From: Laetmonice hystrix
Taxonomy: Eukaryota
Reading direction: 5' to 3'
Length of the DNA: 64,000 nucleotides
Assembly (NCBI GenBank): GCA_965235115.1
Contig: OZ249436.1
Span: 66,836,001 to 66,900,000, forward strand
Shown: positions 15,241 through 56,473 of the stretch, in pieces
Numbering within the stretch: position 1 is the first letter of the stretch
How the letters are laid out: each line of letters begins with the position of its first letter
Program-made: the position numbers and the translations under genes
Notes under the pieces: model-generated
Seen by the model: only the letters and a program-made list of their open reading frames with translations
Databases searched by the model: none
Told to the model about the DNA's origin: nothing

Positions 15241-16147
15241 ATGGTTTTCACAGTTTTCGAGAGCCACAGGGCCGGCTTCTCCTGACGCTGGGGATGGGGC
15301 ACTTGTGAAAACGGAGAACTTAAGTGAAAGTATAAATATTTTATAAAGCTAATGTGGATGACTACATTATGGCGAGTTTGACAAAAGGTCTATTTCTTTA
15401 CGGTTTTGACGACCCCTTAACGATAGTCCTGAGCCCGATGGAAGGTTGGCCGTAAAACGTGCGGTTGGCGACGAGGCTCACAACTCCAGCTGACAGGGTC
15501 ATCGCCGCTCTACCATCCCTCAACAACAGGCAGAGAGGCGGGCATGAACTTCACTAAACGAATTCAGACATTACCAATCGAGTCTACATGGTCAGTGGTT
15601 GAAGGTAAATCAGTGAGCGGAGGAGCACTTTGTCAGTGAATGTAAATACACCTGCAGAGAGAGACTAAACCGGCCCAAGGTGCGGCCTCCCGCGTGTGGC
15701 CCGACTACCAATGATGTGAGGGCGCCCACCGCCATGCAGCCCCTGGCCCGTGACACGGGACGCTGTCACCCTCATTCACACCTCCACCCCCGGCAGGCTA
15801 ACACACCTGGGCCCCCCGTCACTGGGAGGGGATGGGGCGGGCGGGTGCGAGGCCGTGTCCGTTACTTGCTAACAAAGCTCCCTCGCCGCCGGTGTGATCG
15901 AGGCTGAGTATCGCCGATTATTTATCGACCCATAAACCACGGCCACGGAGATCCTCAATGGAGGTGCGAGCGGGAGACAATATATTGGGTCGTTGGGATG
16001 ATGCGTTGTCAGGTAACGGAGGTGGCACTCCGAGGGAGCGACCACGAAGGGGCCGTCTTGACGGTCACAGACTGGGGAGGGTAGGGAGAGGGACCTTCTC
16101 ACGAATCACGGCCTGGGCGGGAGGGGGCAGGCCGTCTCATAGGTCAC

Positions 16148-16192
16148 AGAGAGAGAGGCAGAGATAGAGAGAGAGAGACAGAGAGATAGAGC
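16148..16192. repeat. Imperfect (GA)n microsatellite
   Basis: gagagagaggcagagatagagagagagagacagagagatagag. Confidence 0.8.
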
Positions 16193-19100: not shown

Positions 19101-20385
19101 TGCACCCGCCAGTCTCCGCGGACTCATTGAGTCACCACCAGGGTTGACGGCCGGGGTGATGTGGGAGGGGGAGTAGGGAGACATGACCCTGGGGTCAAGG
19201 GTCACATGTTACGCTGCACGCCGCTAATGACTACCAGATGTCGCCCCAAACCGGTCATATCTCACAATATAACATGATCTCCATTGAATCCTCGTTTTAT
19301 AGCTATGTCAATTTGGGACCTTTTTCGATTCTGTTACTCTCAAGGGGTGGTGGATTTCACGCTCAGGCAGAGCAGTGCTGACTTGATGGAGACTTGATAA
19401 ATAACGTACAGTGCCAAGTTCACTGAGCTAGCTACCCCTCACATCGTATATTTAGTGTAAACTGTGCATTCCATTTACAGCGGATTGCTACGATATTTAC
19501 AACACACTAAGCCTAAAATTTACATATTAGATTTTACAGAAAACTGTGATTAGATAGACAGGTACCTGTGCATAGACTTTACTGTAAATGTCACTTTACA
19601 CGTTACGAGGTATTGAAATAGGAAACATACAGTTACAGTATTACCCATGCATGTGTCTGCTGCAAGCCACATCCTGACCCCCACCTCCTGTTCTACCCCA
19701 CACAAGCTGCTCCGCCTGACCAATATATCATTATTGTTAATATCAAATATCCTTATTCATCGTTCACTGAGCTTTAGGAAGGGACAGGACCCGAGGGTGG
19801 TCAGGTAGTGCCCTAAGTTGGTCATTGGTCGCCTGGGGACATGTCCACGTGTTTCTCGGCCGGTCGGTCAGGGCAATAGTCGGAGAACCGGGTCGTGTAC
19901 TTCCGGACCCTACCACCCCAGCTCACCACAAGTTTAGAAAAACGTTTAATAAACGTCATTCTATGATGAAAACATTTGAATGACTGTGATACGTCCTCAG
20001 GGACCACAGGGACGGACGGATGGACAGTGCCAGCACGGGAAGTGGGATCTGACGGGGCCTGAACGTGTCGGAAGTCTGCCGCTCGCATTCTGATCACGAG
20101 CTCCAGATTAATCATCACCGTCACATGAGATACGGGCCGATACAAGCAACGGGAGGGCAAAAAGTCGGATTAGAACTCCCACTGGCCTCCCTATCGGCGC
20201 GGCAAAGTGAGCTTCAAAACATCGCTGACATTTCTACCTCAGTGCGCCGCGCTTGCAGACAACTTTTCAGTTATAAGAAAGCATCCGTTAATACGATATA
20301 TATACAGCTGAATGAAACACAAAAAAAGTTAATGTGCAGGTTTCGCGTACTCTCCTGGGGCGGGACATTGACATAAAACGTCGGG

Positions 20386-20982
20386 GGAGAGGAGCGTCAT
20401 GGTGTATGCAGGCGCGGATCCAGAAGGGGGTGGGGGGTTCGACCCCCCCCCCCCCTTGGGCTCCATAGTGCCCTTCTTGCCTAAGTTTTGGAGGCTATGA
20501 CATTCAAGACGGCGTCAGGAGGTGCCTTTGAGAAGACCCTGGTGATACGGGGTAAGGAGCGTCATGGTGTATGTGTGAGATGGGGGGAAAGGAGCGTCAT
20601 GGTGTAGCCCTATGTGTGAGCTGGGGGGGAGGAGCGTCATGGTGTATGTGTGAGATGGGGGGAAAGGAGCGTCATGGTGTATGTGTGAGACAGGGGAGAG
20701 GAGCGTCATGGTGTATGTGTGAGATGGGGGGAAAGGAGCGTCATGGTGTATGTGTGAGACAGGGGAGAGGAGCGTCATGGGGTATGTGTGAGACAGGGGA
20801 AAGGAGCGTCATGGTGTATGTGTGAGACAGGGGAGAGGAGCGTCATGGTGTATGTGTGAGACATGGGGAGAGGAGCGTCATGATGAGACAGGGGAAAGGA
20901 GCGTCATGGTGTATGTGTGAGACAGGGGAGAGGAGCGTCATGATGAGACAGGGGAAAGGAGCGTCATGGTGTGTGAGACAGA
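20386..20982. repeat. ~24-33-bp variable minisatellite interrupted by an insertion
   Basis: Core aggagcgtcatggtgtatgtgtgaga. The first copy is separated from the rest by a ~145-bp insert starting caggcgcggatccag. Confidence 0.9.
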
Positions 20983-23127
20983 GGAGGAAAGGAGAGTGAC
21001 ATAATTTATGGGGATACACAGGGCCTTGTGGCGTTGAGAGAGGTTGTGTGGGGTCGTTATTTAACCGGTCAGGTGAGGGCCACACGAGAGCTGTGACGTG
21101 CAGGGTCCGACCAGGACCATGTGTGGCCAGTTACTGGTCTCTCCACCTCCCGGCGTCAGCCTATGTCAGACTCAATCCCCATATTGTATTAACCCCACAG
21201 GTCATAAACCAACCATGGATCCTTCTCCTCCTATTCTGTGTCAGGTCTAGTCGAAAACACCGGTGGCGGAGGCTCTATTATAACAAGTCGCATTAATCAA
21301 GCCCCACGCTTTGTTGGATCCTTTCTCTGTTACATACAAAAGGTGGAAGAAAGCGTTATCAAGTAGTCGGTGTAAATCGGACGTCGTCTTCCTCATAACT
21401 TTCAACATTGTTCATGACGTTCGACAAGACTTGTCTCGATAAGATATACGGGGGCCCACTTCCGCAAGGTTTTCTCTCTTCACTTCAAAACAACAAAAGA
21501 AAACATCTGTCTTCGCCTGCCGGCAGCAGGTAGAGCCGCTAGATCGTGTGCTGTCCACCGGTGGCACATTTTAAATCGTCCTGAGTTTTAAAGGTTCCGC
21601 AGCCTACTGCGCATGCGGCCCCTGCATTTCTCGGACCTGACACCGGATCCCGACCCCCCCCCCCCCCCCCGCCCGCCTCTTTTATGGTGAATTTTGACCA
21701 CTACGCTGGTGAGAACCCTTCGTTCAAAATACTATACTAACAAGCCCATCTGTTTGTGATGGGGTGCGGTGTTCATTATGTTTGGGGGTGGGGGTGGTCA
21801 TTTTGTGACGTCATCCATGGAGACGGCTCATCAACAATTAAGGGTTTGGGGCTTAATCAAAGAAACTTCAGAGAGAGTCTGTAGGCTGGGAGACACTGCT
21901 GCCTTTAGGTGTCCTAATTGGTATCAGGTAGCATACCATTAATGTGAGAGTAAATCTATTAGCCCCTCCTGTTCTCAGCCACAAGGTCAAGCCGACGCCG
22001 TTTGGTGGTGGCATCGGTCGGGGTCAGAGGTGGGGTCAGAAAGGTCAGAAGAATGAGGTATTGTGTGAGTTATGGAGTGATGTGGTGATGTTGATCACTG
22101 CGCCCTGTGTCGCCGGTTGATGTCGCGGCCAGGATGACAGCGTCTTCATTCCTCCATTACCAGAGAGTGGTCAGCGTTCGCTCAGAGGTCCTGTCCAGGC
22201 ACAACGGACAACCACCCCAGACAGATCCGTCATTATTTTAGGATTTTGTTGATCCTGAAACATTACGGATTTCTTCCCACGGCAAGGCATGAAGGTCAAC
22301 ACGTGAAGGGTGCAGGAAGATGAGGAGTATTTAAGTACAGAACCTCTGTAATCTCCCCATGTATTACCTTGTTTTGAAAACATCCTGACAATCGGTTCAA
22401 AGATGGTTTTATTACAAAGTTGTATGACTTAGGTAATTTATGTCACTTGTCCAGGAAGTGGGTCAGTATTTTGTCGGAATCATGACTGTGTTTCTGTGCT
22501 GCCTGCATGTAATATCAAAATTTCGCGGTATGTGTATACGGTTGGGATCCGCTTAGAATAAATAGGATGGATGGAAAGAGAAGGGATTGATTGCCCATTG
22601 ATCTATTTGTGTCGGATTATCTGAGGTCTGTTGGCTGTGGCCCGGGAGGAGGAAGGACAGGGAAGTGGCTGAGGACAACCCATATAAACACTCGGACACC
22701 CTGGCCGGAGGCAGCGCCGCCTGGCGGGGGCCGTGGACATTATCAGCCGAGAGCCCTGAGTGGTGTCAGTGACCGCCTGATGGGGGTGAAGACACTTGCC
22801 CTGACCTCTGCACCCCTCCATAGGTGTAACGTCGGAGACGCCAGGAAATGTGGAGATGCCGATAAACTAACACTGCTAACATTCCCATACCCTTTGAACG
22901 CCAGGAACCCCTGCGCTGAACTCAGGGCACGGAGGCACTGCCCGAGTCCGCTGTCTGATGTCCATACGAAGAGCAGGGCTAAGGGCCACACTGTAAGGGC
23001 CTACTCTGTACGGGTAGAGTCACAGTTAAAGGTTGAGAGCTATCCTTGAAAAGATTATTATCAGACTTAGTCAGTTTCATTGATAAAACATACACAATTG
23101 AACTGAATGTCCTTATACCCGTCAGAT

Positions 23128-23382
23128 CGTCTGTAAGGGCCGAGGTGGGTGGGTTGTTCAGGGGGCTGGACCAAGGCCGTCTGTAAGGGCCGAGGTGGGT
23201 GGGTTGTTCAGGGGGCTGGACCAGGGCCGTCTGTAAGGGCCGGTGTGGGTGGGTTGTTCAGGGGGCTGGACCAGGGCCGTCTGTAAGGGCCGGTGTGGGT
23301 GGGTTGTTCAGGGGGCTGGACCAGGGTCGTCTGTAAGGGCCGAGGTGGGTGGGTTGTTCAGGGGGCTGGACCAGGGCCGTCT
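23128..23382. repeat. 50-bp tandem repeat, 5 copies
   Basis: ctgtaagggc recurs at 23131, 23181, 23231, 23281 and 23331. Confidence 0.95.
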
Positions 23383-25560
23383 GCTGGATCCACAAAGATC
23401 GGTACGGGTACCGACATGACTCATCCGTTTCACAGAACAGCTTTACCTGAAAGTTCTCAATGAATGCGAAGTACGGCAAACCGGAGAGAAAAACTCTCTG
23501 ACGCATACGTTTACTGAAGAATGAAAAAGGCAGGACAACATTTTCTTGGCTACAAACAGTATAGAAACACGTCGTCAGCAGCACACAAAACATGTGTGGC
23601 CAAAGGCCGAAGGTATCGTTTTGCACTGTGTACCGTTGGTAAGAACGAACCGCCGAGTCTTTAAGGCCGAGTTCTGAGTGCACTCTTGGGGGTCGTTTCA
23701 GCGTTTTCAAGGTCACAGCTCGGACATGAGACCAATTCATGATTGAGAGTTCACATCATCGTGGTAGTAGATTAACAGGTGGCAAGCTATCAGCATCGCA
23801 GTCGATTGATTCACTAGAAAAGTTTCTAATAGAATCGTATGTGGTTACTTCATTCATGAAAATGTGAAGAATGCGTCTTGGTCCATTGTCAATCTGTGAA
23901 TGAGATTGTTCGCAATGGCAGTAAAAAGGAGCATGGTTGATGGAAAAAGATTGCCCTGGTAAGAATAGAACACGCCGGAAAGGGCTGCTATGATTTATCT
24001 TCTGTTATTTGATTTACCAGAATACGGAGACATTACTTTGTAATAAACCAGTTTATGGCGACCCGCTTGCTGCATTTCATTCCAAATGCATATTAATTTT
24101 TTTTCTGCGCAATAAAGCATTGTGAGAGCGAGGCTAACGTCTTATTGACGGACAGGGGCGAAACCTTGGCTCGAGCCTCGCTCTGACCTCGCCGCCGACT
24201 TGCGATCTTGTTTTTATGATGGAAACACAACGGACTAAAGTCTACTGCAAACAACGTTCTGCTCATTTGGATCGGGGTGGGTTTGGGGCGTGATACGTAC
24301 GGCGAGGGAAACACTGCCTGAGCACCTGTGGGAATATTAGTCAGCTAGTCACCATGGTAACGGATTGGGGGCGTTATAGGGAGCGTAAGTATGTCACGTC
24401 ACAATGCGTGAATCGACGAGAAATGCGGTTTGGAGGCCCAAACTGGCGCCAGCCAAATTCCGGTTCCGTTCATTTAGCATTGGGAGGCCCATTGAAAAAA
24501 CGTTCTAACTGATAACTCCAAAAATACTGTTCTCTTTGTTATCAAACTGACTATACGTCAGAACCAACATCTCTTATGTCAGAAAAAATACATTTTATAC
24601 TCAAGAAATATTTAATTGTCAAAAGAAAGGCCGATGTTTGGAGAGGTGTACGCTCGCCCTATGTTAAACCAGTGGGGGATTGTGACGTAACGGAAGTTGC
24701 ATGTCGCCAGCGGTCTGACCCAGTTAGACAGAACCTCGTTTTCGGTCGCGAGACTTACGCTCCCTATGGGGAGGGTGTCGGAGACGGCAGGTAAGGAACT
24801 CATCACTAGAACTCGGGTTGAGACAACCAACCCGGCAAGCCGGCCCTAGAACACATCAATTAAAGGTGACCAACCAGACTCGCCTCATCGCCATACGGAT
24901 CGCCACGGCTCCTAGTAACGTTGTCAGGGGTGGACGAGGGATGGGGCGAGGGTGGGGAGGGGAAGAATGGAAAATAAATGACTCTTGACGTGGGGTCCAT
25001 TGTCCTCTATGACAGGTCATGGTTCCGCGTGTGTTAGTCATTGCACACATTATTGGTGTCAGAGTGGAGAGAGAGCGGGAGTAAGCGAACAAAAACTGGA
25101 TCCGCCGGTCGGTTGGTTATTGTTGGTGTATGTGGACGATATGATGATTGGGCTGAGGTGGTGGGGGGATCCACTCCACTTACCTGTATAGGTACCATTG
25201 TCTATTGCAACCCATCCCTTTATTACCGACTTACCCTCACCCCCATCCCCAACCCTCAGCCTCCTTCACCTGTATCGATATGCTAATGAGTTTTTTGACA
25301 TTAAATTTTGAGGGTGTCTTGTTATTAGGCAGATCCGTGAAGGCCGCCAGTCCATTCATATACCAGCAAGCCCGGCTCGTTGTAATGGAACATACGAAAT
25401 CGAATTAGGCTCGGGTGACGGGAGGAATGGTGGTTAGGGGGTTGGGTGGGGGGTGTGTGTGGGGGGGGGGGGGTTAGGGGAGATTGGGGAGTAAAGAAAC
25501 ATAGAGATGGTGACCCCAGAGTCGGAGGGCATACAATGGAGATTGGCAAGAGATGGGTTA

Positions 25561-25714
25561 GTGGGCCCGTTCAGAGACTCGGTGTGTCGGTGGGCCCGTT
25601 CAGAGACTCGGTGTGTTGGTGGGCCCGTTCAGAGACTCGGTGTGTTGGTGGGCCCGTTCAGAGACTCGGTGTGTCGGTGGGCCCGTTCAGAGACTCAGTG
25701 TGTTGGTGGGCCCG
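25561..25714. repeat. 29-bp tandem repeat, ~5 copies
   Basis: Unit gtgggcccgttcagagactcggtgtgt(c/t)g. Confidence 0.95.
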
Positions 25715-26941
25715 AACAGCTGGCCTTGTTCAAGGCCTCGTGACGTTATCCAGACCGACCCGTGCCTGTAGCGACCGCCCGCCCGGCAGCCACGATACGA
25801 CCGCCGCTACTTCTCACACCTTGCCCGTCGCCCCCTCGCCCTGTGAACTCCATCCGCCGCCTATTTCGAGACCCATTAATGCAGCATGTGAAATTCTGAT
25901 GAAAACCACGGACCAGTGGACCCTTGGCGGAGGTGTAAAAATCATTACACCGTTTGTAACTCAAATCGGACACACTCGGAGTGGGTCGTTGAAAAGCACA
26001 GATAGCTGGACGCGGCTGTGAGCGGGGAGCGGCTGTAAGCGGGGAACCTGGCGGTTTTCAACATGCTATCATTAGACCGACGATTAATCATGTGCAGTTG
26101 GCTGTATGGCAGATAGAAATGTCGACAATGGCCTTGGTGGCGGCCAGAGCAGGTTACCCCCACACTTGTACGATTGACAGGGGTCTCAAGTGTAGGGTTT
26201 CAGATGGCGGGGGAGGGTTTTCAGTGCAGCACTGGTTTGATGGACCTTACCCTGAGGCCATATCACGAGCGAGGTTTGGTGTCTGGATGGGTTCGGCTCA
26301 GCCAAGAGATCAGCAGCAGCAATAAACTAGTCCCGACAGTGGGCGGAGACTTTGGCAACGACCGATCTCGGAGCCTGGTGCCCGAACATTTATTGTGATT
26401 GTATATTTATAAGTGAATTGAAATGTGTGAAAGGGGGCAGTTTTCAGAGGTGATGACAGTCAGGTGACAGAAATGATTGAGGTAACTGGGAAGCTGCAAG
26501 GCGCCATCCCCGATACGTGTACAACCCACTAATCCGAACGGTGAGGCCAGCAAAAAAAAGGTCGGGAGAGCTTTATCTTGTAGGAGGAAGTTTGAGTCAA
26601 CATCCGACCATTGCGGGAGATGGTGGTCGGTTTCAGAGTGTCTGCCGGCCTAATCTCGGGGCAGATTGCCTTTTTGATGTAGTCCCTCCTAAAGAGTATG
26701 GTGTCAAGTCATGTACGTGGAATAGATTACTGGTTGTAAGCAAGCGGCGTTACATGTCCAAGTGGTGAGTGGAAGACACTTGACGGCACTACCAGCCGTG
26801 GGGCCCGGCTCGGGGGGAGCAGCAGGAGGAGGAGGGTCACAATAGGCCGGACCACCGGCGGCGCCTGCGTGAGAGGGTCCAAAGAAACTTTCTAAAGACG
26901 AGAAGAGGACGCCGCCATTCAAGTCAACGTCTTCAATCCCA

Positions 26942-27016
26942 GACGAAACTGGTTTTCATAGTGGTTTCCCAGAGTGTATTTGACGTTCTGAGATCATTAT
27001 GAAAACTGTTTTCGTC
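26942..27016 (+). ncRNA. bantam: bantam-family microRNA precursor; mature 3p ~26989-27011 UGAGAUCAUUAUGAAAACUGUUU
   Basis: Fold-back: 5' arm gacgaaactggttttcatagtggtttcccaga, 13-nt loop, 3' arm tctgagatcattatgaaaactgttttcgtc. The 3p sequence has the bantam seed GAGAUCA and matches Drosophila bantam (UGAGAUCAUUUUGAAAGCUGAUU, recalled from memory) at 20 of 23 positions. The 5' arm begins CUGGUUUUC like bantam star strands and gives a 2-nt overhang geometry. Confidence 0.93.
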
Positions 27017-30000
27017 GAACCAGACATCAGATTAAAAGGCTGAGAGAGGAGGTGATGGTGTTGGCCTGGAGGTCAGTATGAGGATCCGGCGGTGTCGGCC
27101 ACACAGGGCCCGGCAGGAGACCAACGTCGTGGGCCGCTGTCGACCCGCGGCTATAATGTGATATCGGTTTTATGGTGATGTATCGAAACGGCCAGCAAGG
27201 ATGTGCTGACTGCGAGTCATTATTGATAATAGTGAGATTATTTAGATAAAAAAAAATGTTGCAGTCACTTGGGGAACTGATGCATGTATGTATTTGGCGG
27301 TCTGAGGTCGTGAGGGCCTTAGCTGCCGTGCAAACTTCACACGAAACGTTCTCGCACGCAAGGGCATCATGCTATATTGCTTGTTTGTCCTGGGGTTGGA
27401 CAGGAGGGGGAGTGAAACTAGTACAATCATAAAGTCGTGGCGTATACACCTTCCTTTTACTATCACCGAAATCCTTACACTGTTTATTGATTATTTTTAC
27501 TGATAAGAGCCAGTTAAAAGGATCTGTCCCCAGCGTCGCCCTCCATCCCACCCCCTTGTTGCCCCAGGTATGTAATGTGCACTTAGTGGATGTTACTACC
27601 ATGTGTTTGGCGGGTTGTTCAATTGGAAGGCAGGGAGGATGAACAAGGCGAGCGTAATGGTGTGAGAGAAACCTAGCTACGAGGTACGCCCTCTTCTTAC
27701 TCCAGCGGGCCCCTGGGGTCGGATACTGTATTCATGTAGTTAGCCTTCTACTAGTCGAGGTAATGCATTCTCCCCAGCGTTTCTTAACGAACAAATAAAA
27801 GATCCACATCTCGTCGACCTGGAGGGATGTAGGTGGAAGGAGTGTTGGAGTGCCATCCTTTCTTCTACTCTAAAAAAAGAAATCATTTTAAAGCTTCGAC
27901 TTCCTCTGTATAGAAATACGCTTGGCTGAATATTATTGACTCTTCATGAAAAGGCTAAAAAGAAATTCTATCACACTGTTCTTGCTTAATAGAGAATTAG
28001 CATAAAATATTAAAACGATTGAATATTAAAAGTTTAAAATTCTATAATGTTAGAAAATAAAATATCCAATATCTATTCATGAAGCAAATCACCATGCAGG
28101 GGCGAATGGACACAACCCATTTTTAAAAAGGGATATCGTTGCCCCCGTCTCATTTCCTGACACCCCCCCCCCCCCGTCTTGTCTCTCCCTGTATACATAC
28201 AGTAGTCTTCACTCTGAGTGATGCTCGTACAGAATTCTCAGTCCTCACAACGAGTTGGTCCTCCCCAGCCATAACAGATGTTCTAGGGCGCGGTTTAAAG
28301 CAAGCAACATGATCGAGCTATTGCTTATTTACAGCATCCTTATGTAAATTGCTCACCTAGCCCTATTGTAAAAACATATCTGCATTGTTTAGAAACTAAA
28401 GCCTGTTTGCTTCTAGAAGGCTGTGGTGGCCAGGGAAAAAGGCGGAGGTTCTAGGCGGGCGGCCGCCTTGAAAGGGCAGCGGGCCGGCGGGGTGGTGCGG
28501 GACGGCCCCTAGAACCTGGCTGACTCGTGTTGGGCGGCCGGCCCGGCATGCCGACCCCTCCCCACTCCCCGGATTCCAACCGTTCACCCCTGCCTCACCT
28601 TCTTTATTTCACTGGGATTTATACTGAAAGAATGCGACAAATATGGTTCGAGTGGACAAGACGTTTGACGCGGTGGGTGGCGCGGCTACAGATCCGACCC
28701 CAGTCTGGAGATGCAAGAGGACGGATTGCAAACACGAGAGGGGACAACCAGGCCGGATTCTATATCACCAAGTTTGTTGATGTTTTGATCAAGAAAAAGT
28801 GGCTGGTTCCCATGTCAGAAGTTGGGAAAATTCTTATTTTTGTGTATATTTTTGGGAGGAGGTAAGTGGCGGCCTGGGTGCGGCGAGGTGGTCTGTCCAG
28901 GTCCCCTACATGTGGGCTGTATGTGCCGGAGGTAACGGCCAGCAACGACCTGTAGCATATGATGGGCAGATATCCACGTAAACTGATCCACACCATACTC
29001 CCGCTGTCTCTACCAAAGGGCAAAAATTTGTTTTCATTGAGATCCCAATGTCTACATTTCTTTATTCGTATGCTTTAATAGACAAAAGACATTGAAAAAA
29101 CACAAAAGAAGACAAGGGAAACGTTTGATAGCTCGATCTTCATGCAAGGCTCCAGAATAAAAACCTTTACATACGAACGGTCGGATTCAGCCAGGAGGTA
29201 ATAGGAATGTCTTCTCTCTCATTCATCCGTACCTGTATAACAACAGAAGCCTATAGGTTTATCCCCGGTAATTTTTAACAGTGGCACGCATAATTTATAG
29301 ACAGAGTCCCATAATAATGATGTGCCCCGTGAAGATGCTTTTAAAACAATACAGGTCTAGATTTTTCCTGGTTAACCCTAAATAATTTATAGGCCTCGAG
29401 CGATAACGACGTAAATATAGGCCTCCGTCGGATAAAAAGTTAAAACAATATAGTCTAGCCCTAGAGATTTATTCACAGTTAAAAGTTCTAGCAATAACCC
29501 CCTGAAGGCTAACAATTTAAGTTCTGTTAAATGCTCTAACAATAGAGTCCTGTTAATTTATTTATATCTCGGTTATAAATGCCCGGAAGTAGACTTATAG
29601 TGGGTTTTTTGACCTTGTGGGACCGTTTGTTCCTCGTGTAATGACAGAGCTTGGACGTTTTGCACTGTAACTGTTCAAATAAGAAAGCTCTACGTCCTGG
29701 TGTTTCCGTCAAGACAAGTATGTTGACCTGCCTCAACGATTTAACCCGCTTGCACATGTGCGGGTACAATTAACCGGGTATTTGGGACAAGGGCGAAGGA
29801 GTATACCGTAAATTATGGATGCCTGTGGCAGTGCTAGAGCAAACCACCTCCATTGGCTCTATCTCTGAGCGTATATTGTTTTGTAAACGTTATGTGGTCA
29901 CGCTATTTGATCGGCTCTGATGAACAATGGGGGAAAGTGACGTTCCGACAACCAAGATGGCCGCCGCTTACCAGTCGCGCCATCTGGCGTTGGTTACGTC

Positions 30001-32528
30001 GTGAACGCCAATCTTCCACGCTGTTCAGATCCGATGACGTCAGATACCCTGTGATAGCCAGCTGAAGGTCACCTGACCAGGTCAAGGTCAAGGCACGCTG
30101 AGTTGAATTTCCATGGAGGAGTTAATGTTGTCTAAGATTTTGAAGATCACACAGCCACTATCGCAATTCTCTGTCTCCTACATTGCCGATCCCTTACTTT
30201 TTGCAATTCATGAAAGGCTCTCCTTTCTGCCTGTCGATCTATTTTCTAGTCAACACTCAGTCAAGAGGGCGTTTTGTCCAATTTAACCAACGTAGGCATA
30301 TTCAATACTTTCGAGATTGAGTTTACACGTCGATATGTCGATTTACCTATACGCTCTATAATAGGCCTACCAAATGTATTTAACCTACAGAAAAATATGT
30401 ATCCCGACACTCCTCAATATAGAGTCAGATATTGCATCCACTTGGGTTTTCACTTGATTGATGCCAATCCTACTCCTACCCGTCCGATAATTTTCATGGA
30501 GAATGTCTCATGTTGCCTCTTACCGTATCCGTGTGAGGAAATGTTTAGGGGAGGGGCGGGGGCGCCCGTCCGGCAAGGACTAGAATAGAATGCGTGTCAG
30601 CATAGACAGGAAATCAGTCTTCAGCTCTGCTCCAACAATTACGTAACGTGTCATGCGTTGACTGTCGTACGTAAATACTCTAATGAGAGGTTGTTATCTA
30701 GAGGTAATATCAACCTGATCTACAATGATAAGGTACGCCAGCTGATTAAAGAATATCTCAACAATACAAAATTAGATGAACTGATTTTGAAGACAGGCAA
30801 GACGTTTCTTTTTCTAGTTGATTCAGCAAACACCTGTTGCTGACTAATCATGACTAATATCTAGGAACTCCTAGTATCTATCACTCAATCCCCATTCTGT
30901 TAACTCCAAACACGCTCGCTAAAAACGTGTCTGCTTTATACTAATAACCCTGAGAGCACGCCACGACCATTTACTCTCCCATTTAGTGGAGATTCTTCTG
31001 GTAAAGACTTAGTGGTCCCCAACCCGTCATTAATCATTTGATCTTTGTTGCGGAGCGATCACAATGGCTTTTGTTTCTCGTTATTGACTCCCCAATGGTG
31101 GTAGTCGATAGAGAAATACTACTTACCATATAAGTCTGCAGGGGTTCATGTTCTGACAGCGGTGGAATTAATCAACCGCAGAGATCTTTGATATCATTAT
31201 AAAGATATAATCTACATTATAGATAATTTGGCCTAACTTGTATCTATCTTTGAGAGCCAACGGTGCAACATGCGTGCCGACATCTCAAGTCTAAGGTCAG
31301 TAAGAGCAATGTTGTGTACAGGACATTATCATCAGTTTAATTGTAGGCCTATAGGCTTATGTTTACGTATATATACAGGCGAACGTAATATCTTCCTTTT
31401 ATCTGTAATCGTCATGAGATTCTCACTGCTGATGTCGAACCCGAAGTGTTCTAATAATGCGGAATGGGTCCGGTGTATGCAGGAACCGCCGTGGAGGGAG
31501 GGAGCAACAGTAACGACCAAATCATCAGGAAATATTGCCACCAATGTCTCCACTGATACGTTTATATCAACCTACTCTTTCTTTCCGGCTTCCTCTTCAT
31601 CTTCCTTCTCTTCATCATTTCAGTCGTAGCAGACTCGTTTATAACATAACGAGATGATGATAATTGTAATCGGCCGAATATGACGAGAGCGTACGGAAAT
31701 ATTCGGCCGAGTCAAATATACGGCCGACTATGAAATAATCGTATAAGTGGGAGGGCGGCTTAACTACATGCATGGTCTGTTTCACCTCCGGGTCAGAGGG
31801 CAAGAGGTGGGGTCAGGTGGGCGGGGCGGAGGTCAAGGCCGACCGTTGACGGATAAGGCCGGCCAACTGCTGACCAGCAGTGCATCATTTTCTCCGCTCG
31901 CCCTCACAATGCGATTATTGGCCTGAGAACCGTACGATAATAACCTGACTTTTACGTTTGGCATCATCTGTTTAAGAAGACGTCAGAAATAAAGCTCATA
32001 TAATTGTACTGTAGACTGTGCTTTATAGGCACAAGGCAAAATGTCTGATCGTTGTATCTGATGGGATTAAGCGAGACTCTGCTAGAGAAAACTGCCATGC
32101 GACTTCATAAAAGATATGCCTTAATTGCTTCTTTGGCCTATATGTCTTTTTTGAAGAAAAAGAGAAAATTAAAAAAGAAGATATTCACTAGAAATCGTTC
32201 TGAATCATCTCTACTTCTCGCTGTGTACCCGAGGGGTGGGTGTGCATGTGTGAGACCTACCCAGGGACAGACCGCGCTGACGGGTGGAGGCCGGGCTCCC
32301 GAAGGTTTGAGGTCGGGAGACACGGCACCCATGGCCCGGACTCTGACGGTCTCCTGGTCCTCGTCTGTCAGTACGACCAGCGTAAACTGACAGTCTCTAG
32401 TAAACAGGACCCTGGCAGTTACCTTACCACTAACCCCCATCTCACTTCACTATTATACCCCCACCCCTCTGACAGGGTTTCCAGTCGGTATAGTAGTCGC
32501 CTAGTGAGGAGCACATTATTGACTATAC

Positions 32529-32593
32529 TACTAGACTCTAGTACTAGACTCTAGTACTAGACTCTAGTACTAGACTCTAGTACTAGACTCTAG
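32529..32593. repeat. 13-bp tandem repeat, ~5 copies, containing the palindrome ctagtactag
   Basis: Unit tagactctagtac. Confidence 0.9.
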
Positions 32594-34335
32594 CGGCGCC
32601 TGATCATCCCATGAAGGTATGTCTTTAGCTCGGGACGATCTTATTCATTTGTGTGTATTATTGCTGCGACTAGATATCTCTACCTAGGAGCATTATATGC
32701 GATAAATATCTGATTTTGGGGAACCAAATCTATTTAGGACACAAGTCTTTGAAGGGAACATCACGTCATAGAATACCTGGTGTTTGTACATCAGTGACGA
32801 TCTTTTTGATTTGAATCCATTTGATTTGCATATCCTGTATATGGTTCGTTTCTTATTGAATGGAAATCATATAGGCGGATTCAGGGGTTGCGCCCTTTTT
32901 GACCCCCTCCCTACTGCATGGACCCCCTTGGGACCCTCCCCCTTCTAAAATCCTGGTTCTTCATCGCGAAACGTGGTTGAGCGATATTCCGGGAGATGCG
33001 TGCATCGCGCCTGCGCAGTCAATAGTGTTTCCGCTTTCGCAGTAAATCTGTTCAGCGAGGGAACGTAACAAATCTCCCATCTTCCTTCATACAGGTTTGT
33101 TGTTAATGACCTTGGCAAGTTCTAAGACACATGACATGGCGACAAGAAGGCAGAAAAACTAAAACCAGATGATTGACCAATCTATTTTGAAGTAAAGATA
33201 CTTTGAGGGAATCGATCAGATTATTGGGATAAATGTAATAGGTAAATGCCCATCCCCTCCGCCTCCACGAAATCCAATCCTATGGGACCAACTTCACCTT
33301 ACAATAATATCGTGTATCACTGGCATGAAGCACCTTTAAAATTCTTGGTCAGCGAAGTGGAATTTGTCTTGCGTTAAGAACGTAATTACTGACAACAATT
33401 AACAGAAGCGCTCGTATCTTTCTATCTCGTAGTGTTTATTATAAAGCGTCATGGCATAAATTACAGCTGTGAGACCCCGTGTAGTTACCAGTTTCCTACT
33501 CCTTCACTTTATCCTTAAAGCACATATGGTTGAAACAGGCCATTGAGACATATCAGCGACATAAAATAAATATACAAACTATTTCGCATCTACTGGAGAC
33601 TATATCCTGAAGGGTACCGTATAAATAAAGTATAACTCTGCCGAGGCCAAGACAATGCTATGGGCAAATAAACGCCATCACAAAACCGGTTGTGTAGATG
33701 TCTTTGCCAGTGCTGGAACTACAAATAACAATATAATCAGCCAGTATATGTACAGACGGTTTGGACCTGAATACACCATGAGACGGTTCTCAACTCGAGT
33801 CGCTCGTGCTCTGCTCAGTCAGTCCACAGTTCTAACGGCACAAGCCTGAGCACTCTTCTACACGATACGTTTTAATATCGATTATCAATTAAAGAAATAA
33901 AAAGTGTGTCAACGGAGTGTAAGTATCTTGTCCCGTAAGTATGAGCCGTACATACGGGAGCCCTTCACGATGAACAGGGCAGCACCATTGGCCTCACTCA
34001 TTAAGCATTATCTAGGAGCTGTTCCGTCCAAAAACAAATTTGGACATATTTTTTGTTATAACAATGGCTTATCAAGATCTGCCACCTCCGGTATTTGAAC
34101 TATATGCTGTGTACGACACCCACCCACTGAGGGCAGACACCGTGAAGTCAGTGTTGTTAGGTGTCCACTCAAGGAACGTCCGGGTGTATTGTACAGGTTT
34201 TCACTCATCGGTCGGCACCGTTGATTTGGCTGAATTCAGCCCGGGTCACACAGCACCGTAACATAGTCCACCTCACTTCGCGGCCCCGAACATTGGCGAC
34301 CAGCGTGAGGCATCCCGGCCTACGTACGAGAAACG

Positions 34336-34341
34336 TTTATT
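34336..34341 (-). terminator. Candidate distal poly(A) signal AATAAA for SoxE
   Basis: Forward tttatt, about 260 nt after the stop codon. A further candidate lies near 33435. Motif only. Confidence 0.3.
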
Positions 34342-34414
34342 ATGTCATGACGTTTCACGTCATTCCACGTACCGCTGGAGTCTACGCGTGACCCTTTAAC
34401 GGGGGAGAGTAGCC

Positions 34415-34423
34415 TGAGATCAT
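34415..34423 (-). promoter_or_regulatory. bantam 8mer seed-match site in the putative SoxE 3' UTR
   Basis: The minus strand reads AUGAUCUCA, complementary to bantam nt 1-9, about 180 nt after the stop codon. UTR extent is not proven. Confidence 0.6.
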
Positions 34424-34553
34424 GTAGGGACGTTGACGTACCGGAAGTGCGACGTACACCACATTCTCTTCACTTCCGGTCCGAAGAGTTTCATCATTTT
34501 CAACATGTCCTCTCTGGGAGCCGTGACAACCCCTGTCCTTGTAGTTGGGTGGA

Positions 34554-34559
34554 TTTATT
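34554..34559 (-). terminator. Candidate proximal poly(A) signal AATAAA for SoxE
   Basis: Forward tttatt, about 42 nt after the stop codon. Motif only. Confidence 0.3.
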
Positions 34560-34600
34560 TTATATTTCACAAGGATTACAACAGTTTATAAAGTTAACAG

Positions 34601-35427
34601 TTACGGCCGTCCGTAGCGGTCCCACTGAGAGTTAGCGTTGATGGGCGGTACGGTTCCCGTTGTACCGGTCGGGTAGAGGGAGCGGAGGCCTGGGGCCACA
34701 CACTGGTAGGGTGGCGGGGCCGGTGAGTACATGGCCCCGCTCTGGGCGTAGTATTGGGCGGCGGCGGCCGCCGAGCTGTCCGCTCCGAACCCCTCCATGT
34801 CCGGGTCGTCTTGATGCTGCAGCGTGAAGCTAAACCGAGGCTGGAGGTGTTCGTAGGTGAATTTGTGGTGATCGGACGGGCTTCGGAAATCGGCGACGCT
34901 CATGGCGGGAGTTTGCTCCATCTTAACAGGAGGAGAATGTTGGTCGGGGTATTTGCTACCGTTACCATTGTCACTTCCGGTGCTCGGCGGCGCATGCGCG
35001 TGCGTATGAGAATGGCCGTACGGGCTGTCATTTTGCATGCTTCCATTGGCGGAGTGCATGCCGCCGTGCAGTTCGTGGTTACTGTCGGGAGATATGGGAC
35101 TTCCGGTGCCGTTGCTATGGGAACTCGTGGTAGAGGCCATACGTTGTAGCTGGCCGCTGGCCGATGACGTTGACATCCGGTAAGAGTTGACCCAGGTGGG
35201 TGCCGTGGTGGTGTTGGTGGTCTGTTGGTTGGGCGCGTAGGGTGGGGGAGGGTGGGGACCCATGGGTTGCCCCCGGCCCGGCTGGCCTGGGTGAGGGTGG
35301 CCGTTGGGTGGAAGGTACTGGTCAAGCTCACTGTCCTCGAACTGACCCATGTTTACTACGACGTCCGTGCTCAGATCCCGGATGTCCACACCGCTGAAGT
35401 CGATTGGCTGAGTTTGTGAGGGCTGGC
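34601..35427 (-). CDS. SoxE: SoxE coding exon 3 (K2 region and C-terminal region, stop TAA)
   Basis: Acceptor ctgtcttttccag|GC is in phase with exon 2. Encodes [33 protein letters not shown], matching the SoxE K2 motif, and ends ...SQWDRYGRP*. Exons total 440+371+827=1638 nt, or 545 aa. Confidence 0.93.
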
Positions 35428-35737: not shown

Positions 35738-36108
35738 CTGGATGACGGTGAGCTGATGTTCGGACGCCCAGTGTCTCTCCATGGTTGGGGGTTGTCGGTG
35801 GGGTCGGGGGTCCCTGGCTACCCCCCTGACTCCGGGTGGCCCCTCCACCCCCGCCCCCTCCGCCACACTCTCCGTCACTCAGCGTGGACGTCGGCGACAC
35901 TTCTCCCATCGATCGGTACATGCCGGACGGCGCATGCGTCAGAGTGTGCGCATGCCCGTTCTGGTGTTCCGGGAACCCGTTTCCGGCGCCCTTAAGTGGT
36001 TTCCGGCGGCGCGGCTGGTACTTGTAGTCCGGGTGGTCCTTCTTGTGCTGTACTCGGAGTCGTTCGGCTTCCTCCACAAACGGCTTCTTCTCTTCATCAT
36101 TCAGCAAT
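35738..36108 (-). CDS. SoxE: SoxE coding exon 2 (end of the HMG box, GPPTPPTTP motif)
   Basis: Acceptor ttaacag|A completes codon AGA with exon 1. Encodes [36 protein letters not shown] and the SoxE motif GPPTPPTTP. Donor CCA G|GTACGT (phase 1). Confidence 0.96.
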
Positions 36109-38919: not shown

Positions 38920-39302
38920 TTGGTCACACCCAGCCAGGTCCTTGGCCGCTAGTCACGTTGGTCACACTCAGCCAGGTCTTCAACATAACCGCTAGTCACG
39001 TTGGTCACACTCAGCCAGGTCTTCAACATAACCGCTAGTCACGCTGGTCACACACAGCCATGTCCTCAACATGGGCGCTATAGTCACGTTGGTCACAGCC
39101 AGCCAGGTCTTCAACATAACCGCTAGTCACGTTGGTCACACACAGCCAAGTCTTCAACATAACGGCTAGTCACGTTGGTCACACCCAGCCAAGTCTTCAA
39201 CATAACCGCTAGTCACGTTGGTCACACCAAGCCAGGTCTTTGACATGGCCGCTAGTCACGTTCGTCACTACCAGCAACATAACCGCTAGTCACGTTGATC
39301 AC
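38920..39302. repeat. ~43-bp degenerate minisatellite, ~8 copies
   Basis: Unit ctagtcacgttggtcacactcagccaggtcttcaacataaccg. Confidence 0.9.
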
Positions 39303-40426: not shown

Positions 40427-40910
40427 TGGTGGTGTGGCCGGCAGGGGTGTGACTATCAGAGGACCGTGTGGCCGGCAGGGGTGTGACTATCAGAGAGCCG
40501 TGTGGCCAGCAGGGGTGTGACTATCAGAGAGCCGTTTGGCTGGTAGGAGTATGACTATCAGAGGACCGTGTGGCCGGCAGGGGTGTGACTATCAGAGGAC
40601 CGTGTGGCCGGCAGGGGTGTGACTATCAGAGGACCGTGTGGCCAGCAGGGGTGTGACTATCAGAGAGCCGTGTGGCCAGCAGGGGTGTGACTATCAGAGA
40701 GCCGTTTGGCTGGTAGGAGTATGACTATCAGAGGACCGTTTGGCTGGTAGGAGTGTGACTATCAGAGGACTGTTTGGCTGGTAGGGGTATGACTATCAGA
40801 GGACCGTTTGGCTGGTAGGAGTATGGCTATCAGAGGACCGTTTGGCTGGTAGGAGTATGGCTATCAGAGGACCGTTTGGCTGGTACGAGTAGGAGTATCA
40901 GAGGACCGTG
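40427..40910. repeat. 34-bp minisatellite, ~14 copies, two variant classes
   Basis: Units ccgtgtggccggcaggggtgtgactatcagagga and ccgtttggctggtaggagtatgactatcagagga. Confidence 0.95.
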
Positions 40911-41805
40911 TAGAAGAGGACAAGGGCTGCACTCGGTACGATCAACTGACTACTTTCCCCTCACCGCCTCGCCTCGCCGCCCAAATCGTTTTTAAACTGT
41001 TCATCATTAATTTTAACACAAATTTGAGAAAAAAAGGTGGCTGTAGAACATATGTGGTTCCACGTACAAGCTATAAGATTTGTTAAAAAAGTTATGTACC
41101 ACATACTCTTAGCCCTGTAGGGTCACCTGTTACTGTTAGTATGTTTGTGTGGGTGGGTTAGGGGAAGTGGGTGGGGGGTACACTGTGGGGGGGAGGTTAC
41201 ATTATGATAAGTAATAATGATATCCTCCTTTCATTGTACGTTTCTTTGGGGGTCACAAAACCTTCAATTGGAACATCACGATTGCCACTTTCTAAATAAA
41301 GTAACTATCCATAAAAAGGTATGGGAGTTGGCAGGGGTACATCTTCCCCTTGTCCTCTAACCCCGAGTATTGTTGTCCAAGGAGGTTGGCCGTGAATGCC
41401 TACCAGGACACCCCGCCAGGGCTCAGTCATACCCTGATAGCTTTACATTGCTACCGCTAGGGGGCCGACATGCAGACATGTTGCACAAATGGTTTCGCAA
41501 TCAACCAATTCAATAAGAAGAAATAGACACACAAAAAGTAACGAAAGAAAAGGGCATTGTTCTTAAAAAATTATATTGGCAATAAAATTTCGGCCGGTAT
41601 AGGTTTATATCCTGAGTATCGCCGATATAAAAAGCTTTAAGCTGAGAGTTATTCTTGAAGCCTGGGTGGATATGTGGTTGGGCGGCGGTTAGAGCCGGGA
41701 TATAGGATGAGGGATTCAGGGTGTTGGTCCAACAGCTTGATGGCACCATCAGGTATCAATGTCAGCATCACAGCTTGGGTCAACATCGCCAGGTATGTCC
41801 GGGGT

Positions 41806-42991
41806 ATATCAACGTCGGCCGAATACAAGCTTGGCAGGCACCGTAATCATATCAACGTCGGCCGAATACAAGCTTGGCAGGCACCGCAATCATATCAACG
41901 TCAGCCGAATACAAGCTTGGCAGGCACCGCAATCATATCAACGTCGGCCGAATACAAGCTTGGCAGGCACCGCAATCATATCAACGTCAGCCGAATACAA
42001 GCTTGGCAGGCACCGCAATCATATCAACGTCGGCCGAATACAAGCTTGGCAGGCACCGTAATCATATCAACGTCGGCCGAATACAAGCTTGGCAGGCACC
42101 GCAATCATATCAACGTCGGCCGAATACAAGCTTGGCAGGCACCGTAATCATATCAACGTCGGCCGAATACAAGCTTGGCAGGCACCGCAATCATATCAAC
42201 GTCAGCCGAATACAAGCTTGGCAGGCACCGCAATCATATCAACGTCGGCCGAATACAAGCTTGGCAGGCACCGCAATCATATCAACGTCAGCCGAATACA
42301 AGCTTGGCAGGCACCGCAATCATATCAACGTCGGCCGAATACAAGCTTGGCAGGCACCGCAATCATATCAACGTCAGCCGAATACAAGCTTGGCAGGCAC
42401 CGCAATCATATCAACGTCAGCCGAATACAAGCTTGGCAGGCACCGTAATCATATCAACGTCGGCCGAATACAAGCTTGGCAGGCACCGCAATCATATCAA
42501 CGTCAGCCGAATACAAGCTTGGCAGGCACCGCAATCATATCAACGTCGGCCGAATACAAGCTTGGCAGGCACCGCAATCATATCAACGTCGGCCGAATAC
42601 AAGCTTGGCAGGCACCGCAATCATATCAACGTCAGCAGAATACAAGCTTGGCAGGCACCGCAATCATATCAACGTCGGCCGAATACAAGCTTGGCAGGCA
42701 CCGCAATCATATCAACGTCGGCCGAATACAAGCTTGGCAGGCACCGCAATCATATCAACGTCGGCCGAATACAAGCTTGGCAGGCACCGCAATCATATCA
42801 ACGTCAGCAGAATACAAGCTTGGCAGGCACCGCAATCATATCAACGTCGGCCGAATACAAGCTTGGCAGGCACCGCAATCATATCAACGTCGGCCGAATA
42901 CAAGCTTGGCAGGCACCGCAATCATATCAACGTCAGCCGAATACAAGCTTGGCAGGCACCGCAATCATATCAACGTCAGCCGAATACAAGC
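41806..42991. repeat. 43-bp minisatellite, ~27 copies, one HindIII site per unit
   Basis: Unit atatcaacgtcggccgaatacaagcttggcaggcaccgcaatc. Produces the same 43-aa repeat ORF in all three + frames. Confidence 0.98.
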
Positions 42992-54964: not shown

Positions 54965-55113
54965 NNNNNNNNNNNNNNNNNNNNNNNNNNNNNNNNNNNN
55001 NNNNNNNNNNNNNNNNNNNNNNNNNNNNNNNNNNNNNNNNNNNNNNNNNNNNNNNNNNNNNNNNNNNNNNNNNNNNNNNNNNNNNNNNNNNNNNNNNNNN
55101 NNNNNNNNNNNNN
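54965..55113. other. Assembly gap (149 N)
   Basis: Run of N. Confidence 1.
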
Positions 55114-56033: not shown

Positions 56034-56473
56034 CTCCATAGCTTGCCCAGGGTCTTGGAGAGTTCGGCGTTGTGAAGGTGCGGGTACTGGTCGGCTAGTT
56101 TCCGTCGGGCTGCCTGAGCCCACACCATGAACGCATTCATCGGCCGCTTGATGTGAGGTTTCCGCTTCTCTCCACCAGGAGGCCTGGTCGGCATGGGAAC
56201 CAACGTCCAGTCGTATCCTTTGAGCACCTGGCTGACAGCATCCTGGATCTGGTTGGTGCACTTGTCGTCGGCGGCGGCGGCCAGTTTGCCGGCCAGGGAG
56301 GCCATTGCCTTCTCTGTCAAGTGGACGGAGCGCGGACTGCCGCTGGTCGTGTCGTCGTCAGAGCCGAGCGGTGAGTCGAGACTCGGTGAGCGGCCTGGTG
56401 ACCCGGGACTGTCCGCCCCCAACCCGCTACCACCACTACCGTTACCCGGCTTCGGGTCGTTGACATCCGTCAT
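56034..56473 (-). CDS. SoxE: SoxE coding exon 1 (N-terminus, dimerization domain, first part of the HMG box)
   Basis: First in-frame ATG at 56473 (MTDVNDPKP...). Encodes the SoxE dimerization motif [20 protein letters not shown] and the HMG start [42 protein letters not shown]. Ends at AG|GTGAGT (phase 2), the conserved SoxE intron position LWR^LL. Confidence 0.97.

What the first reader, a model, noticed from the sequence alone, without database searches (positions are those of the whole stretch)
26942..34601. Linked miRNA-target pair: bantam sits ~7.5 kb from SoxE, whose 3' UTR has a perfect bantam site
Seen: a bantam hairpin on + (26942-27016) converges on SoxE on -. The SoxE sense strand carries AUGAUCUCA at 34423-34415, pairing with bantam nt 1-9 (an 8mer site extended to position 9). 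It was the only other TGAGATCA I noticed in the window. A given 8mer is expected in a ~270-nt UTR about 0.4% of the time (270/4^8). Established: bantam is a protostome growth and stem-cell miRNA; SoxE is a gonad, glia and skeletogenic regulator. Inference: this is a cis-linked repressive or feed-forward module sharing one regulatory domain. I do not know of a description of it but cannot search.
Basis: partly seen in the sequence, partly recalled or inferred. Interest (0 to 1): 0.85.

Follow-up and report, generated by a model that had tools for sequence, protein, structure and literature searches.

The report
bantam microRNA beside its possible target SoxE
A real bantam microRNA gene lies 7.6 kb from the end of a real SoxE gene whose tail carries a perfect bantam seed match; the neighbourhood recurs in other probable annelid worms and similar matches recur after several of their SoxE genes, but nothing yet shows the microRNA represses SoxE.

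Summary
A single-copy bantam hairpin lies at 26935-27018 (+) (Rfam 66.7 bits). The genome's only SoxE gene is on the minus strand (Sox_N plus HMG box, best solved match SOX-9). ATGATCTCA sits at 34423-34415, 179 nt after the SoxE stop, and is the only other TGAGATCA in the window.

Comparison with nine SoxE lineages (probably annelids) adds two things.
- **Linkage:** a convergent bantam hairpin lies 1.8-2.5 kb after the SoxE stop in three species of one other clade. So the linkage is inherited, not chance. It is not within 10 kb in five other lineages.
- **Seed matches:** a 7mer-m8 or 8mer bantam match lies within 500 nt of the stop in 4 of 9 lineages. Leaving the window out, rank tests give p of about 0.002-0.04. 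All four are lineages where bantam is adjacent or the contig is too short to tell.

Weak points:
- No RNA data exist for this organism.
- An AATAAA at +42 could end the mRNA before the site.
- The 3' regions do not align between lineages.
- The nearest relative's DNA could not be fetched.

Verdict: a plausible, partly supported bantam-SoxE target pair with conserved linkage. It resembles Hox-cluster microRNAs. Function is untested.

The parts
26935..27018 (+). bantam pre-miRNA hairpin, single copy in the 627-Mb genome
   Evidence: Rfam RF00727 66.7 bits, gathering score 61. MFE -34.5 kcal/mol, z -4.65. Only full match in the genome. Aligns with the L011, L014 and L016 hairpins, with one compensatory pair.
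26989..27011 (+). predicted mature bantam-3p, TGAGATCATTATGAAAACTGTTT
   Evidence: Lies on the 3' arm and aligns to the mature part of the Rfam consensus. The seed is identical in L011, L014 and L016. Processing has not been observed.
34415..34423 (-). bantam 8mer seed match extended to nt 9 (ATGATCTCA on the SoxE sense strand), 179 nt after the stop
   Evidence: Not a decayed hairpin. Single-copy sequence. Predicted unpaired probability 0.45 against a median of 0.046.
34601..35427 (-). SoxE last exon (exon 3) with stop codon at 34603-34601
   Evidence: ORF. Acceptor AG at 35429-35428. Homologues P0020 (85%), P0001 and P0002.
35738..36108 (-). SoxE exon 2 (second half of the HMG box)
   Evidence: Pfam HMG_box. 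tblastn with the Paralvinella and Owenia proteins. Splice sites read.
56035..56473 (-). SoxE exon 1, coding part (Sox_N dimerisation domain and first half of the HMG box); the 3' boundary is approximate
   Evidence: tblastn 65.8% to Owenia P0018. Pfam Sox_N 59.9 bits, HMG 53.8 bits. SOX-9 is the best solved match.
34554..34559 (-). AATAAA 42 nt after the stop; if used, the mRNA ends before the site
   Evidence: Use not tested.
34336..34341 (-). AATAAA 260 nt after the stop; if used, the site lies inside a UTR of about 280 nt
   Evidence: Use not tested.
28304..28411 (.). single-copy conserved non-coding element between bantam and SoxE
   Evidence: 78.7% identity over 108 nt to L005:13505-13611, E 4e-17. 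Single copy in the genome. Inverted relative to SoxE in L005.

Best explanation
bantam is an independent, single-copy microRNA gene transcribed towards the 3' end of the genome's only SoxE gene. The two have stayed neighbours since before the split of at least two SoxE lineages (probably annelid). The likely reason is that bantam sits inside the gene-poor regulatory landscape downstream of SoxE. Mature bantam-3p (seed GAGAUCA) can pair with an 8mer site 179 nt into the SoxE 3' region. If the mRNA uses the poly(A) signal at +260 or a later one, and the two RNAs meet in the same cells, Argonaute-bound bantam would dampen SoxE by ordinary seed-based repression. Shown here: both genes, the site, the conserved linkage, and the recurrence of sites in other lineages. 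Inferred: that the site is transcribed, that the RNAs are co-expressed, that repression occurs, and that linkage and targeting are connected.
For: The bantam hairpin is confirmed and so is SoxE; the SoxE last exon is single copy in the genome. A convergent bantam lies after the SoxE stop in L011 at 2.0 kb (63.1 bits), in L014 at 2.5 kb (63 bits) and in L016 at 1.8 kb (59.5 bits). Seed matches near the stop are: window 8mer at +179, L006/L007/L008 8mer at +199 (followed by AATAAA at +214), L017 8mer at +490, and L014 7mer-m8 at +124. Within 500 nt of the stop, TGATCTCA is among 1-8 of 65,536 8mers present in at least 3 of 9 lineages. Without the window it is present in 2 of 8 lineages, with rank p of 0.002-0.004 at 500 nt, 0.008-0.014 at 1000 nt and 0.03-0.04 at 250 nt. 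TGATCTC occurs 4 times on the sense strand of these regions and never on the antisense strand. The regions behave like real UTRs: the miR-124 match GTGCCTT is the top non-repetitive 7mer, 9 on the sense strand and 0 on the antisense strand, and repression of Sox9 by miR-124 is known in vertebrates (PMC4406026, citing PMC2766245). The window's site is predicted to be accessible and lies in single-copy sequence.
Against: No RNA run could be listed for this organism or for L016. An AATAAA at +42 precedes the site. L005, the nearest relative whose DNA could be fetched, has no site within 4.3 kb and no bantam within 10 kb. L012, L013, L019 and L020 also lack both, and L011, L015 and L016 lack a separate site. 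The 3' regions do not align, even between L011 and L014, whose last exons are 84% identical. The sites may therefore be independent gains or chance. Local A+U content around the window's site is low (0.37-0.43) and there is no 3' supplementary pairing. The window as a whole holds no more TGAGATCA than chance predicts. The choice of 500 nt as the test length was made after seeing the data.
Confidence: 0.45

Rival explanations
1. Bystander linkage plus a chance seed match. bantam is trapped in the SoxE regulatory landscape, where rearrangements would break long-range enhancers, so the neighbourhood is kept for reasons unrelated to targeting. The 8mer in the window is then a neutral or very recent match with no selected function, and the mRNA may even end at the +42 signal.
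For: Five of nine lineages have no site. The site differs between close relatives L011 and L014. The window-wide count equals chance. A single-copy conserved non-coding element lies between the two genes and is shared with L005, which points to a constrained regulatory region. No protein domain was found in the ten longest ORFs of 1-34000 (those of at least 138 aa), which fits a gene desert. AATAAA lies at +42.
Against: The bantam seed ranks among the few most recurrent k-mers just after the stop, with p of 0.002-0.04 even without the window, and it is strand-specific. Canonical 8mer sites usually respond when the miRNA is present (general knowledge of miRNA targeting).
Confidence: 0.4
2. Coupling in cis through convergent transcription or antisense overlap, not through the seed site. 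The primary bantam transcript and the SoxE 3' end run into each other, so transcription of one interferes with the other, or long SoxE UTR isoforms carry a full antisense copy of bantam.
For: The convergent orientation is the same in all four linked species. In L011, L014 and L016 the hairpin is only 1.8-2.5 kb from the stop, with candidate poly(A) signals on both sides of it.
Against: The gap in the window is 7.6 kb and no transcript data exist. Nothing shows SoxE UTRs longer than 1.8 kb.
Confidence: 0.05
3. The match at 34415 is a relic of a second, decayed bantam hairpin rather than a target site.
For: Ten of the first eleven bases match mature bantam (TGAGATCATGT against TGAGATCATTA), and in the other clade bantam lies much closer to the SoxE stop.
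Against: No hairpin forms there: MFE z = +1.09, and 173 of 200 shuffles fold at least as well. There is no Rfam match even at E = 10. Similarity to mature bantam ends after base 11.
Confidence: 0.01

Closest known systems
Hox-cluster microRNAs that regulate flanking Hox genes: iab-4/iab-8 with Ubx and abd-A (PMC3597655, PMC3041157); miR-10 and miR-196 (from my own knowledge)
   Same: A conserved microRNA gene is kept next to a developmental transcription-factor gene whose 3' UTR carries seed matches to it. Sites turn over between species while the linkage persists.
   Different: The Hox cases have reporter and genetic evidence, and the microRNAs lie inside a multi-gene cluster. Here there is one microRNA and one gene, convergent in orientation. 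The linkage was seen in only two clades and there is no functional evidence.
miR-124 repression of Sox9, a vertebrate SoxE gene (PMC4406026, citing Cheng et al. 2009, PMC2766245)
   Same: A SoxE 3' UTR acts as a target of a deeply conserved microRNA. miR-124 seed matches are also the most enriched non-repetitive 7mer in the SoxE 3' regions compared here.
   Different: miR-124 is not linked to Sox9. The window's own proximal 3' region has no miR-124 7mer within 4.5 kb. bantam is absent from vertebrates (my own knowledge).
Drosophila bantam and its established targets such as hid (my own knowledge)
   Same: Same microRNA family and seed (Rfam RF00727), with the same expected Argonaute and seed mechanism.
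   Different: No searchable paper mentions bantam together with SoxE or Sox100B. From memory, fly bantam is on chromosome arm 3L and Sox100B on 3R, so they are not neighbours. The linkage is therefore not shared by all protostomes.

Membership tests
bantam microRNA (Rfam RF00727) | Covariance-model score at or above the gathering score | tested here: met
   66.7 bits against 61.
bantam microRNA (Rfam RF00727) | Stable hairpin of about 80 nt with the mature sequence on the 3' arm and seed GAGAUCA | tested here: met
   -34.5 kcal/mol, z -4.65. Mature sequence TGAGATCATTATGAAAACTGTTT.
bantam microRNA (Rfam RF00727) | Conserved in orthologous loci with the structure kept | tested here: met
   Four hairpins align; 25 pairs, one compensatory change, three kept through a change on one side.
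bantam microRNA (Rfam RF00727) | Small-RNA reads showing Drosha/Dicer products | not testable with these tools
   No RNA run could be listed.
SoxE group of Sox transcription factors | HMG box closest to SOX8/9/10 | tested here: met
   Pfam HMG_box in exons 1 and 2. SOX-9 is the best solved match by 35 bits.
SoxE group of Sox transcription factors | N-terminal dimerisation domain (Sox_N, PF12444) directly before the HMG box | tested here: met
   59.9 bits against a cut-off of 23.1.
Canonical animal microRNA target site | Match to miRNA nt 2-8 with A opposite nt 1 (8mer) | tested here: met
   TGATCTCA at 34422-34415, extended to nt 9.
Canonical animal microRNA target site | Lies inside the 3' UTR of the mature mRNA | not testable with these tools
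   No RNA runs. Poly(A) signals at +42 and +260 lie on either side of the site.
Canonical animal microRNA target site | Conserved in orthologous UTRs | tested here: inconclusive
   Present in 4 of 9 lineages within 500 nt, rank p 0.002-0.04. The UTRs do not align and five lineages lack the site.
Canonical animal microRNA target site | Seed-dependent repression and co-expression | not tested
   Needs reporter assays, AGO-CLIP and in situ data.
Cis-linked microRNA-target module (Hox-microRNA type) | Linkage conserved across lineages | tested here: inconclusive
   Convergent bantam lies 1.8-7.6 kb from the stop in the window and in L011, L014 and L016. It is not within 10 kb in L005, L012, L013, L019 or L020. 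L006 and L017 contigs are too short to tell.
Cis-linked microRNA-target module (Hox-microRNA type) | Shared regulatory domain or co-regulation of the microRNA and its neighbour | not testable with these tools
   Only indirect hints: a conserved non-coding element between the genes and no recognisable protein domains in the ten longest ORFs of 1-34000.

The most novel reading that the evidence does not exclude
Linkage and targeting evolve together. bantam is kept convergent just downstream of SoxE, inside one regulatory landscape, so the same enhancers switch on both genes. bantam then dampens SoxE (an incoherent feed-forward loop written in cis), and the seed site survives only where the linkage survives. 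In the present sample, both lineages with adjacent bantam have a site in at least one species. None of the five lineages without bantam within 10 kb has a 7mer-m8 or 8mer within 1 kb. That is 2 of 2 against 0 of 5, Fisher p about 0.05, with very few and phylogenetically related points.
Probability: 0.12. Interest if true: 0.75.

Novelty: new member of a known kind. Interest (0 to 1): 0.5.

Why it matters
Outside Hox clusters there are few cases where a deeply conserved microRNA is kept next to a developmental transcription factor that it may target. If bantam really represses SoxE, two things would follow. It would link a growth and stem-cell microRNA to a regulator of gonad, glia and skeletal fates in spiralian animals. 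It would also give a compact system, one microRNA, one gene and a few kilobases, for asking whether genomic linkage helps build microRNA feed-forward circuits. Even if targeting fails, the conserved convergent bantam-SoxE neighbourhood is a useful microsynteny marker for annotating annelid genomes.

Tried and rejected
**No RNA evidence could be obtained**
- No RNA run could be listed for the window's SoxE region or for L016. The three runs that hold the window's stretch are of unrecorded type and share one sample and study.

**Site as a decayed second bantam hairpin: rejected**
- No fold (z +1.09) and no Rfam match at E up to 10.

**Aligning 3' regions**
- Window against L006 and L005, and L014 against L011, gave no credible alignment.
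- Positional homology of the sites therefore could not be tested.

**DNA that could not be fetched**
- The closest relative P0020 (85% identical): file too large.
- P0024: file too large.
- Owenia P0018: withheld.
- All 12 contig look-ups are used, so flanks beyond 10 kb and named mollusc or annelid genomes could not be examined.

**Naming the lineages failed**
- Accession searches in papers found nothing.
- A search with the Paralvinella C-terminal region found only one more unnamed protein.
- 'Annelid' rests on Paralvinella and Owenia being the only named hits.

**Other dead ends**
- Literature: no paper holds bantam together with SoxE or Sox100B. Two papers that mention bantam and synteny do not treat its neighbours.
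- The ten longest ORFs (at least 138 aa) in 1-34000 gave no real Pfam domain.
Full report
**1. The observation**

The window holds exactly two copies of TGAGATCA, at 26989 and 34415. Dinucleotide shuffles give 2.46 on average, so the window as a whole is not enriched.

The first copy starts the 3' arm of a hairpin that Rfam calls bantam: RF00727, 66.7 bits against a gathering score of 61, at 26935-27018 +. It folds at -34.5 kcal/mol, z = -4.65. It is the only full bantam in the 627-Mb genome.

The second copy, read on the minus strand, is ATGATCTCA at 34423-34415, 179 nt after a TAA stop at 34603-34601.

The gene ending there is SoxE:
- Exon 1 (56473 to about 56035) has the SoxE-specific Sox_N domain (59.9 bits) and half an HMG box. 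SOX-9 is its best solved relative.
- Exon 2 (36108-35738) holds the other half of the HMG box.
- Exon 3 (35427-34601) is a fast-evolving C-terminal exon.
- Intron 1 is about 20 kb. The C-terminal exon is single copy in the genome.

**2. What is uncertain in the window itself**

- Candidate poly(A) signals lie at +42, +260, +725 and +1161. The first would end the mRNA before the site.
- The site is not a relic hairpin and lies in single-copy sequence.
- It is predicted to be unusually accessible, with unpaired probability 0.45 against a median of 0.046. However, its flanks are G+C-rich and there is no 3' supplementary pairing.

**3. Comparative evidence: how the loci were found**

Homologues of the C-terminal exon led to genomic loci from other assemblies and from metagenome contigs. 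The only named relatives are the annelids Paralvinella and Owenia, so the organism is most likely an annelid. A tree of the exon groups the loci into nine lineages.

| Lineage (loci) | bantam near SoxE | Best bantam seed match after the stop |
|---|---|---|
| Window | 7.6 kb, convergent | 8mer at +179 |
| L005 (nearest relative with DNA) | none within 10 kb | none within 4.3 kb (7mer-m8 at +4316) |
| L006/L007/L008 | unknown (4 kb of flank) | 8mer at +199 |
| 'Q' clade (L011, L014, L015, L016) | 2.0, 2.5 and 1.8 kb, convergent, in L011, L014 and L016 (L015 contig too short) | 7mer-m8 at +124 in L014 only |
| L012 | none within 10 kb | none |
| L013 (Paralvinella) | none within 10 kb | 7mer-A1 at +1385 only |
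| L017 | unknown (1.7 kb of flank) | 8mer at +490 |
| L019 | none within 10 kb | none |
| L020 | none within 10 kb | none |

**4. Comparative evidence: linkage**

- In a second clade ('Q'), a bantam hairpin lies on the strand opposite to SoxE, convergent. It is 2.0 kb after the stop in L011 (63.1 bits), 2.5 kb in L014 (63 bits) and 1.8 kb in L016 (59.5 bits).
- The four hairpins align, with one compensatory change.
- The chance of such proximity in a 627-Mb genome is about 3 in 100,000. The shared orientation also argues for inheritance.
- A search for the mature sequence allowing five substitutions found no bantam within 10 kb in L005, L012, L013, L019 or L020.
- L006 and L017 have only 4 kb and 1.7 kb of flank, so they cannot be judged.

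**5. Comparative evidence: seed matches**

- The positions are given in the table above. In L006/L007/L008 the 8mer is followed by AATAAA at +214.
- P0024, whose frame runs through the stop, ends ...TLPTLISAGLS. This fits the L014 site sequence, so that species probably has the site too.
- L011, L015 and L016 have no site separate from the hairpin, and L005, L012, L019 and L020 have none within 1 kb.
- In a rank test over all k-mers, TGATCTCA is one of only 1-8 of 65,536 8mers present in at least 3 of 9 lineages within 500 nt of the stop.
- Leaving out the window, which was the discovery sample, it is present in 2 of 8 lineages. The rank p is 0.002-0.004 at 500 nt, 0.008-0.014 at 1000 nt and 0.03-0.04 at 250 nt.
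- The 7mer occurs four times on the sense strand of these regions and never on the antisense strand.

As a positive control, the miR-124 match GTGCCTT is the most frequent non-repetitive 7mer: nine on the sense strand and none on the antisense strand. miR-124 is a known repressor of vertebrate Sox9 (PMC4406026, citing PMC2766245). So these regions behave like real microRNA-regulated UTRs.

**6. Limits of the comparative evidence**

- The 3' regions do not align between lineages, not even between L011 and L014, whose last exons are 84% identical. The sites are therefore either retained while everything around them changed, or gained repeatedly.
- The test window length was chosen after seeing the data.
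- The nine lineages are few and unnamed.
- The closest relative (P0020, 85%) could not be read.

**7. Mechanism**

The most likely reading (confidence 0.45) has four parts:
- bantam is an independent gene inside the gene-poor landscape downstream of SoxE.
- The neighbourhood is ancestral to at least two of the lineages compared.
- SoxE mRNAs that use the +260 or a later poly(A) signal carry a canonical 8mer.
- That site lets Argonaute-bound bantam lower SoxE output wherever both are expressed.

The main rival (0.40) keeps the linkage as a bystander effect of a constrained regulatory block and treats the window's site as non-functional. Supporting that rival, a single-copy element of about 110 nt between the two genes (28304-28411) is 79% identical to one 2.6 kb after the SoxE stop in L005, in inverted orientation. 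It contains ATTGT motifs of the kind that Sox proteins bind (my reading).

A minor rival is coupling through convergent transcription or antisense overlap (0.05). This is more plausible in the Q clade, where the hairpin lies only about 2 kb from the stop.

**8. Comparison with known systems and novelty**

The closest known kind is the Hox-cluster microRNAs that regulate flanking Hox genes (PMC3597655, PMC3041157). The present case shares conserved linkage and turnover of sites. It lacks any functional evidence, and the linkage is seen in only part of the sampled lineages.

No searchable paper mentions bantam together with SoxE or Sox100B. From memory, the two genes lie on different chromosome arms in Drosophila. 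I therefore rate this a new member of a known kind, with interest 0.5.

An intriguing but very weakly supported pattern remains. Sites were found only in lineages where bantam is adjacent or the flank is unknown, and in none of the five lineages without bantam within 10 kb.

Noticed in passing
window 28304-28411; L005:13505-13611: A single-copy conserved non-coding element of about 110 nt lies between bantam and SoxE, 78.7% identical between two species whose UTRs otherwise do not align. It is inverted relative to SoxE in L005. It contains ATTGT (Sox-like) and TTATGTAA motifs, so it could be a SoxE enhancer.
   Followed up: partly
L006, L011, L015, L016, L017: first 1 kb after the SoxE stop: The miR-124 seed match GTGCCTT is the most frequent non-repetitive 7mer in these SoxE 3' regions (9 on the sense strand, 0 on the antisense strand). 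This suggests the vertebrate miR-124/Sox9 relation may be ancient. The window itself has none within 4.5 kb of the stop. The miR-71 match GTCTTTC also recurs, in 5 loci.
   Followed up: partly
window 14000-28000: Sustained positive GC skew on the + strand (0.10-0.25) ends just after the bantam hairpin. It may mark the primary bantam transcription unit. No recognisable protein domains in the long ORFs tested there.
   Followed up: no
L011:12862-12944, L014:13223-13305, L016:12061-12142: In this clade bantam lies only 1.8-2.5 kb after the SoxE stop on the opposite strand, with AATAAA signals on both sides of it. Long SoxE UTR isoforms could therefore carry a complete antisense copy of the bantam hairpin.
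   Followed up: no
window 41806-43010, 40432-40911, 38946-39275, 20542-20994, 23128-23383, 25557-25714: Several minisatellite arrays with units of 29-50 nt (up to 28 copies at 97% identity) lie in SoxE intron 1 and upstream of bantam. They create long spurious ORFs.
   Followed up: no
protein P0024 (locus DNA not available): In one relative the SoxE frame runs through the usual stop position for about 50 more codons into what is 3' UTR in L014. This could be a sequencing error or a real stop loss.
   Followed up: no
L011:1345-5253: A retrotransposon (reverse transcriptase, RNase H, integrase domains) sits about 2 kb upstream of the HMG-containing ORF, probably in an intron of that species' SoxE gene.
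   Followed up: no
window 54965-55113: A run of 149 N in SoxE intron 1, about 900 nt from exon 1. Left as it is.
   Followed up: no
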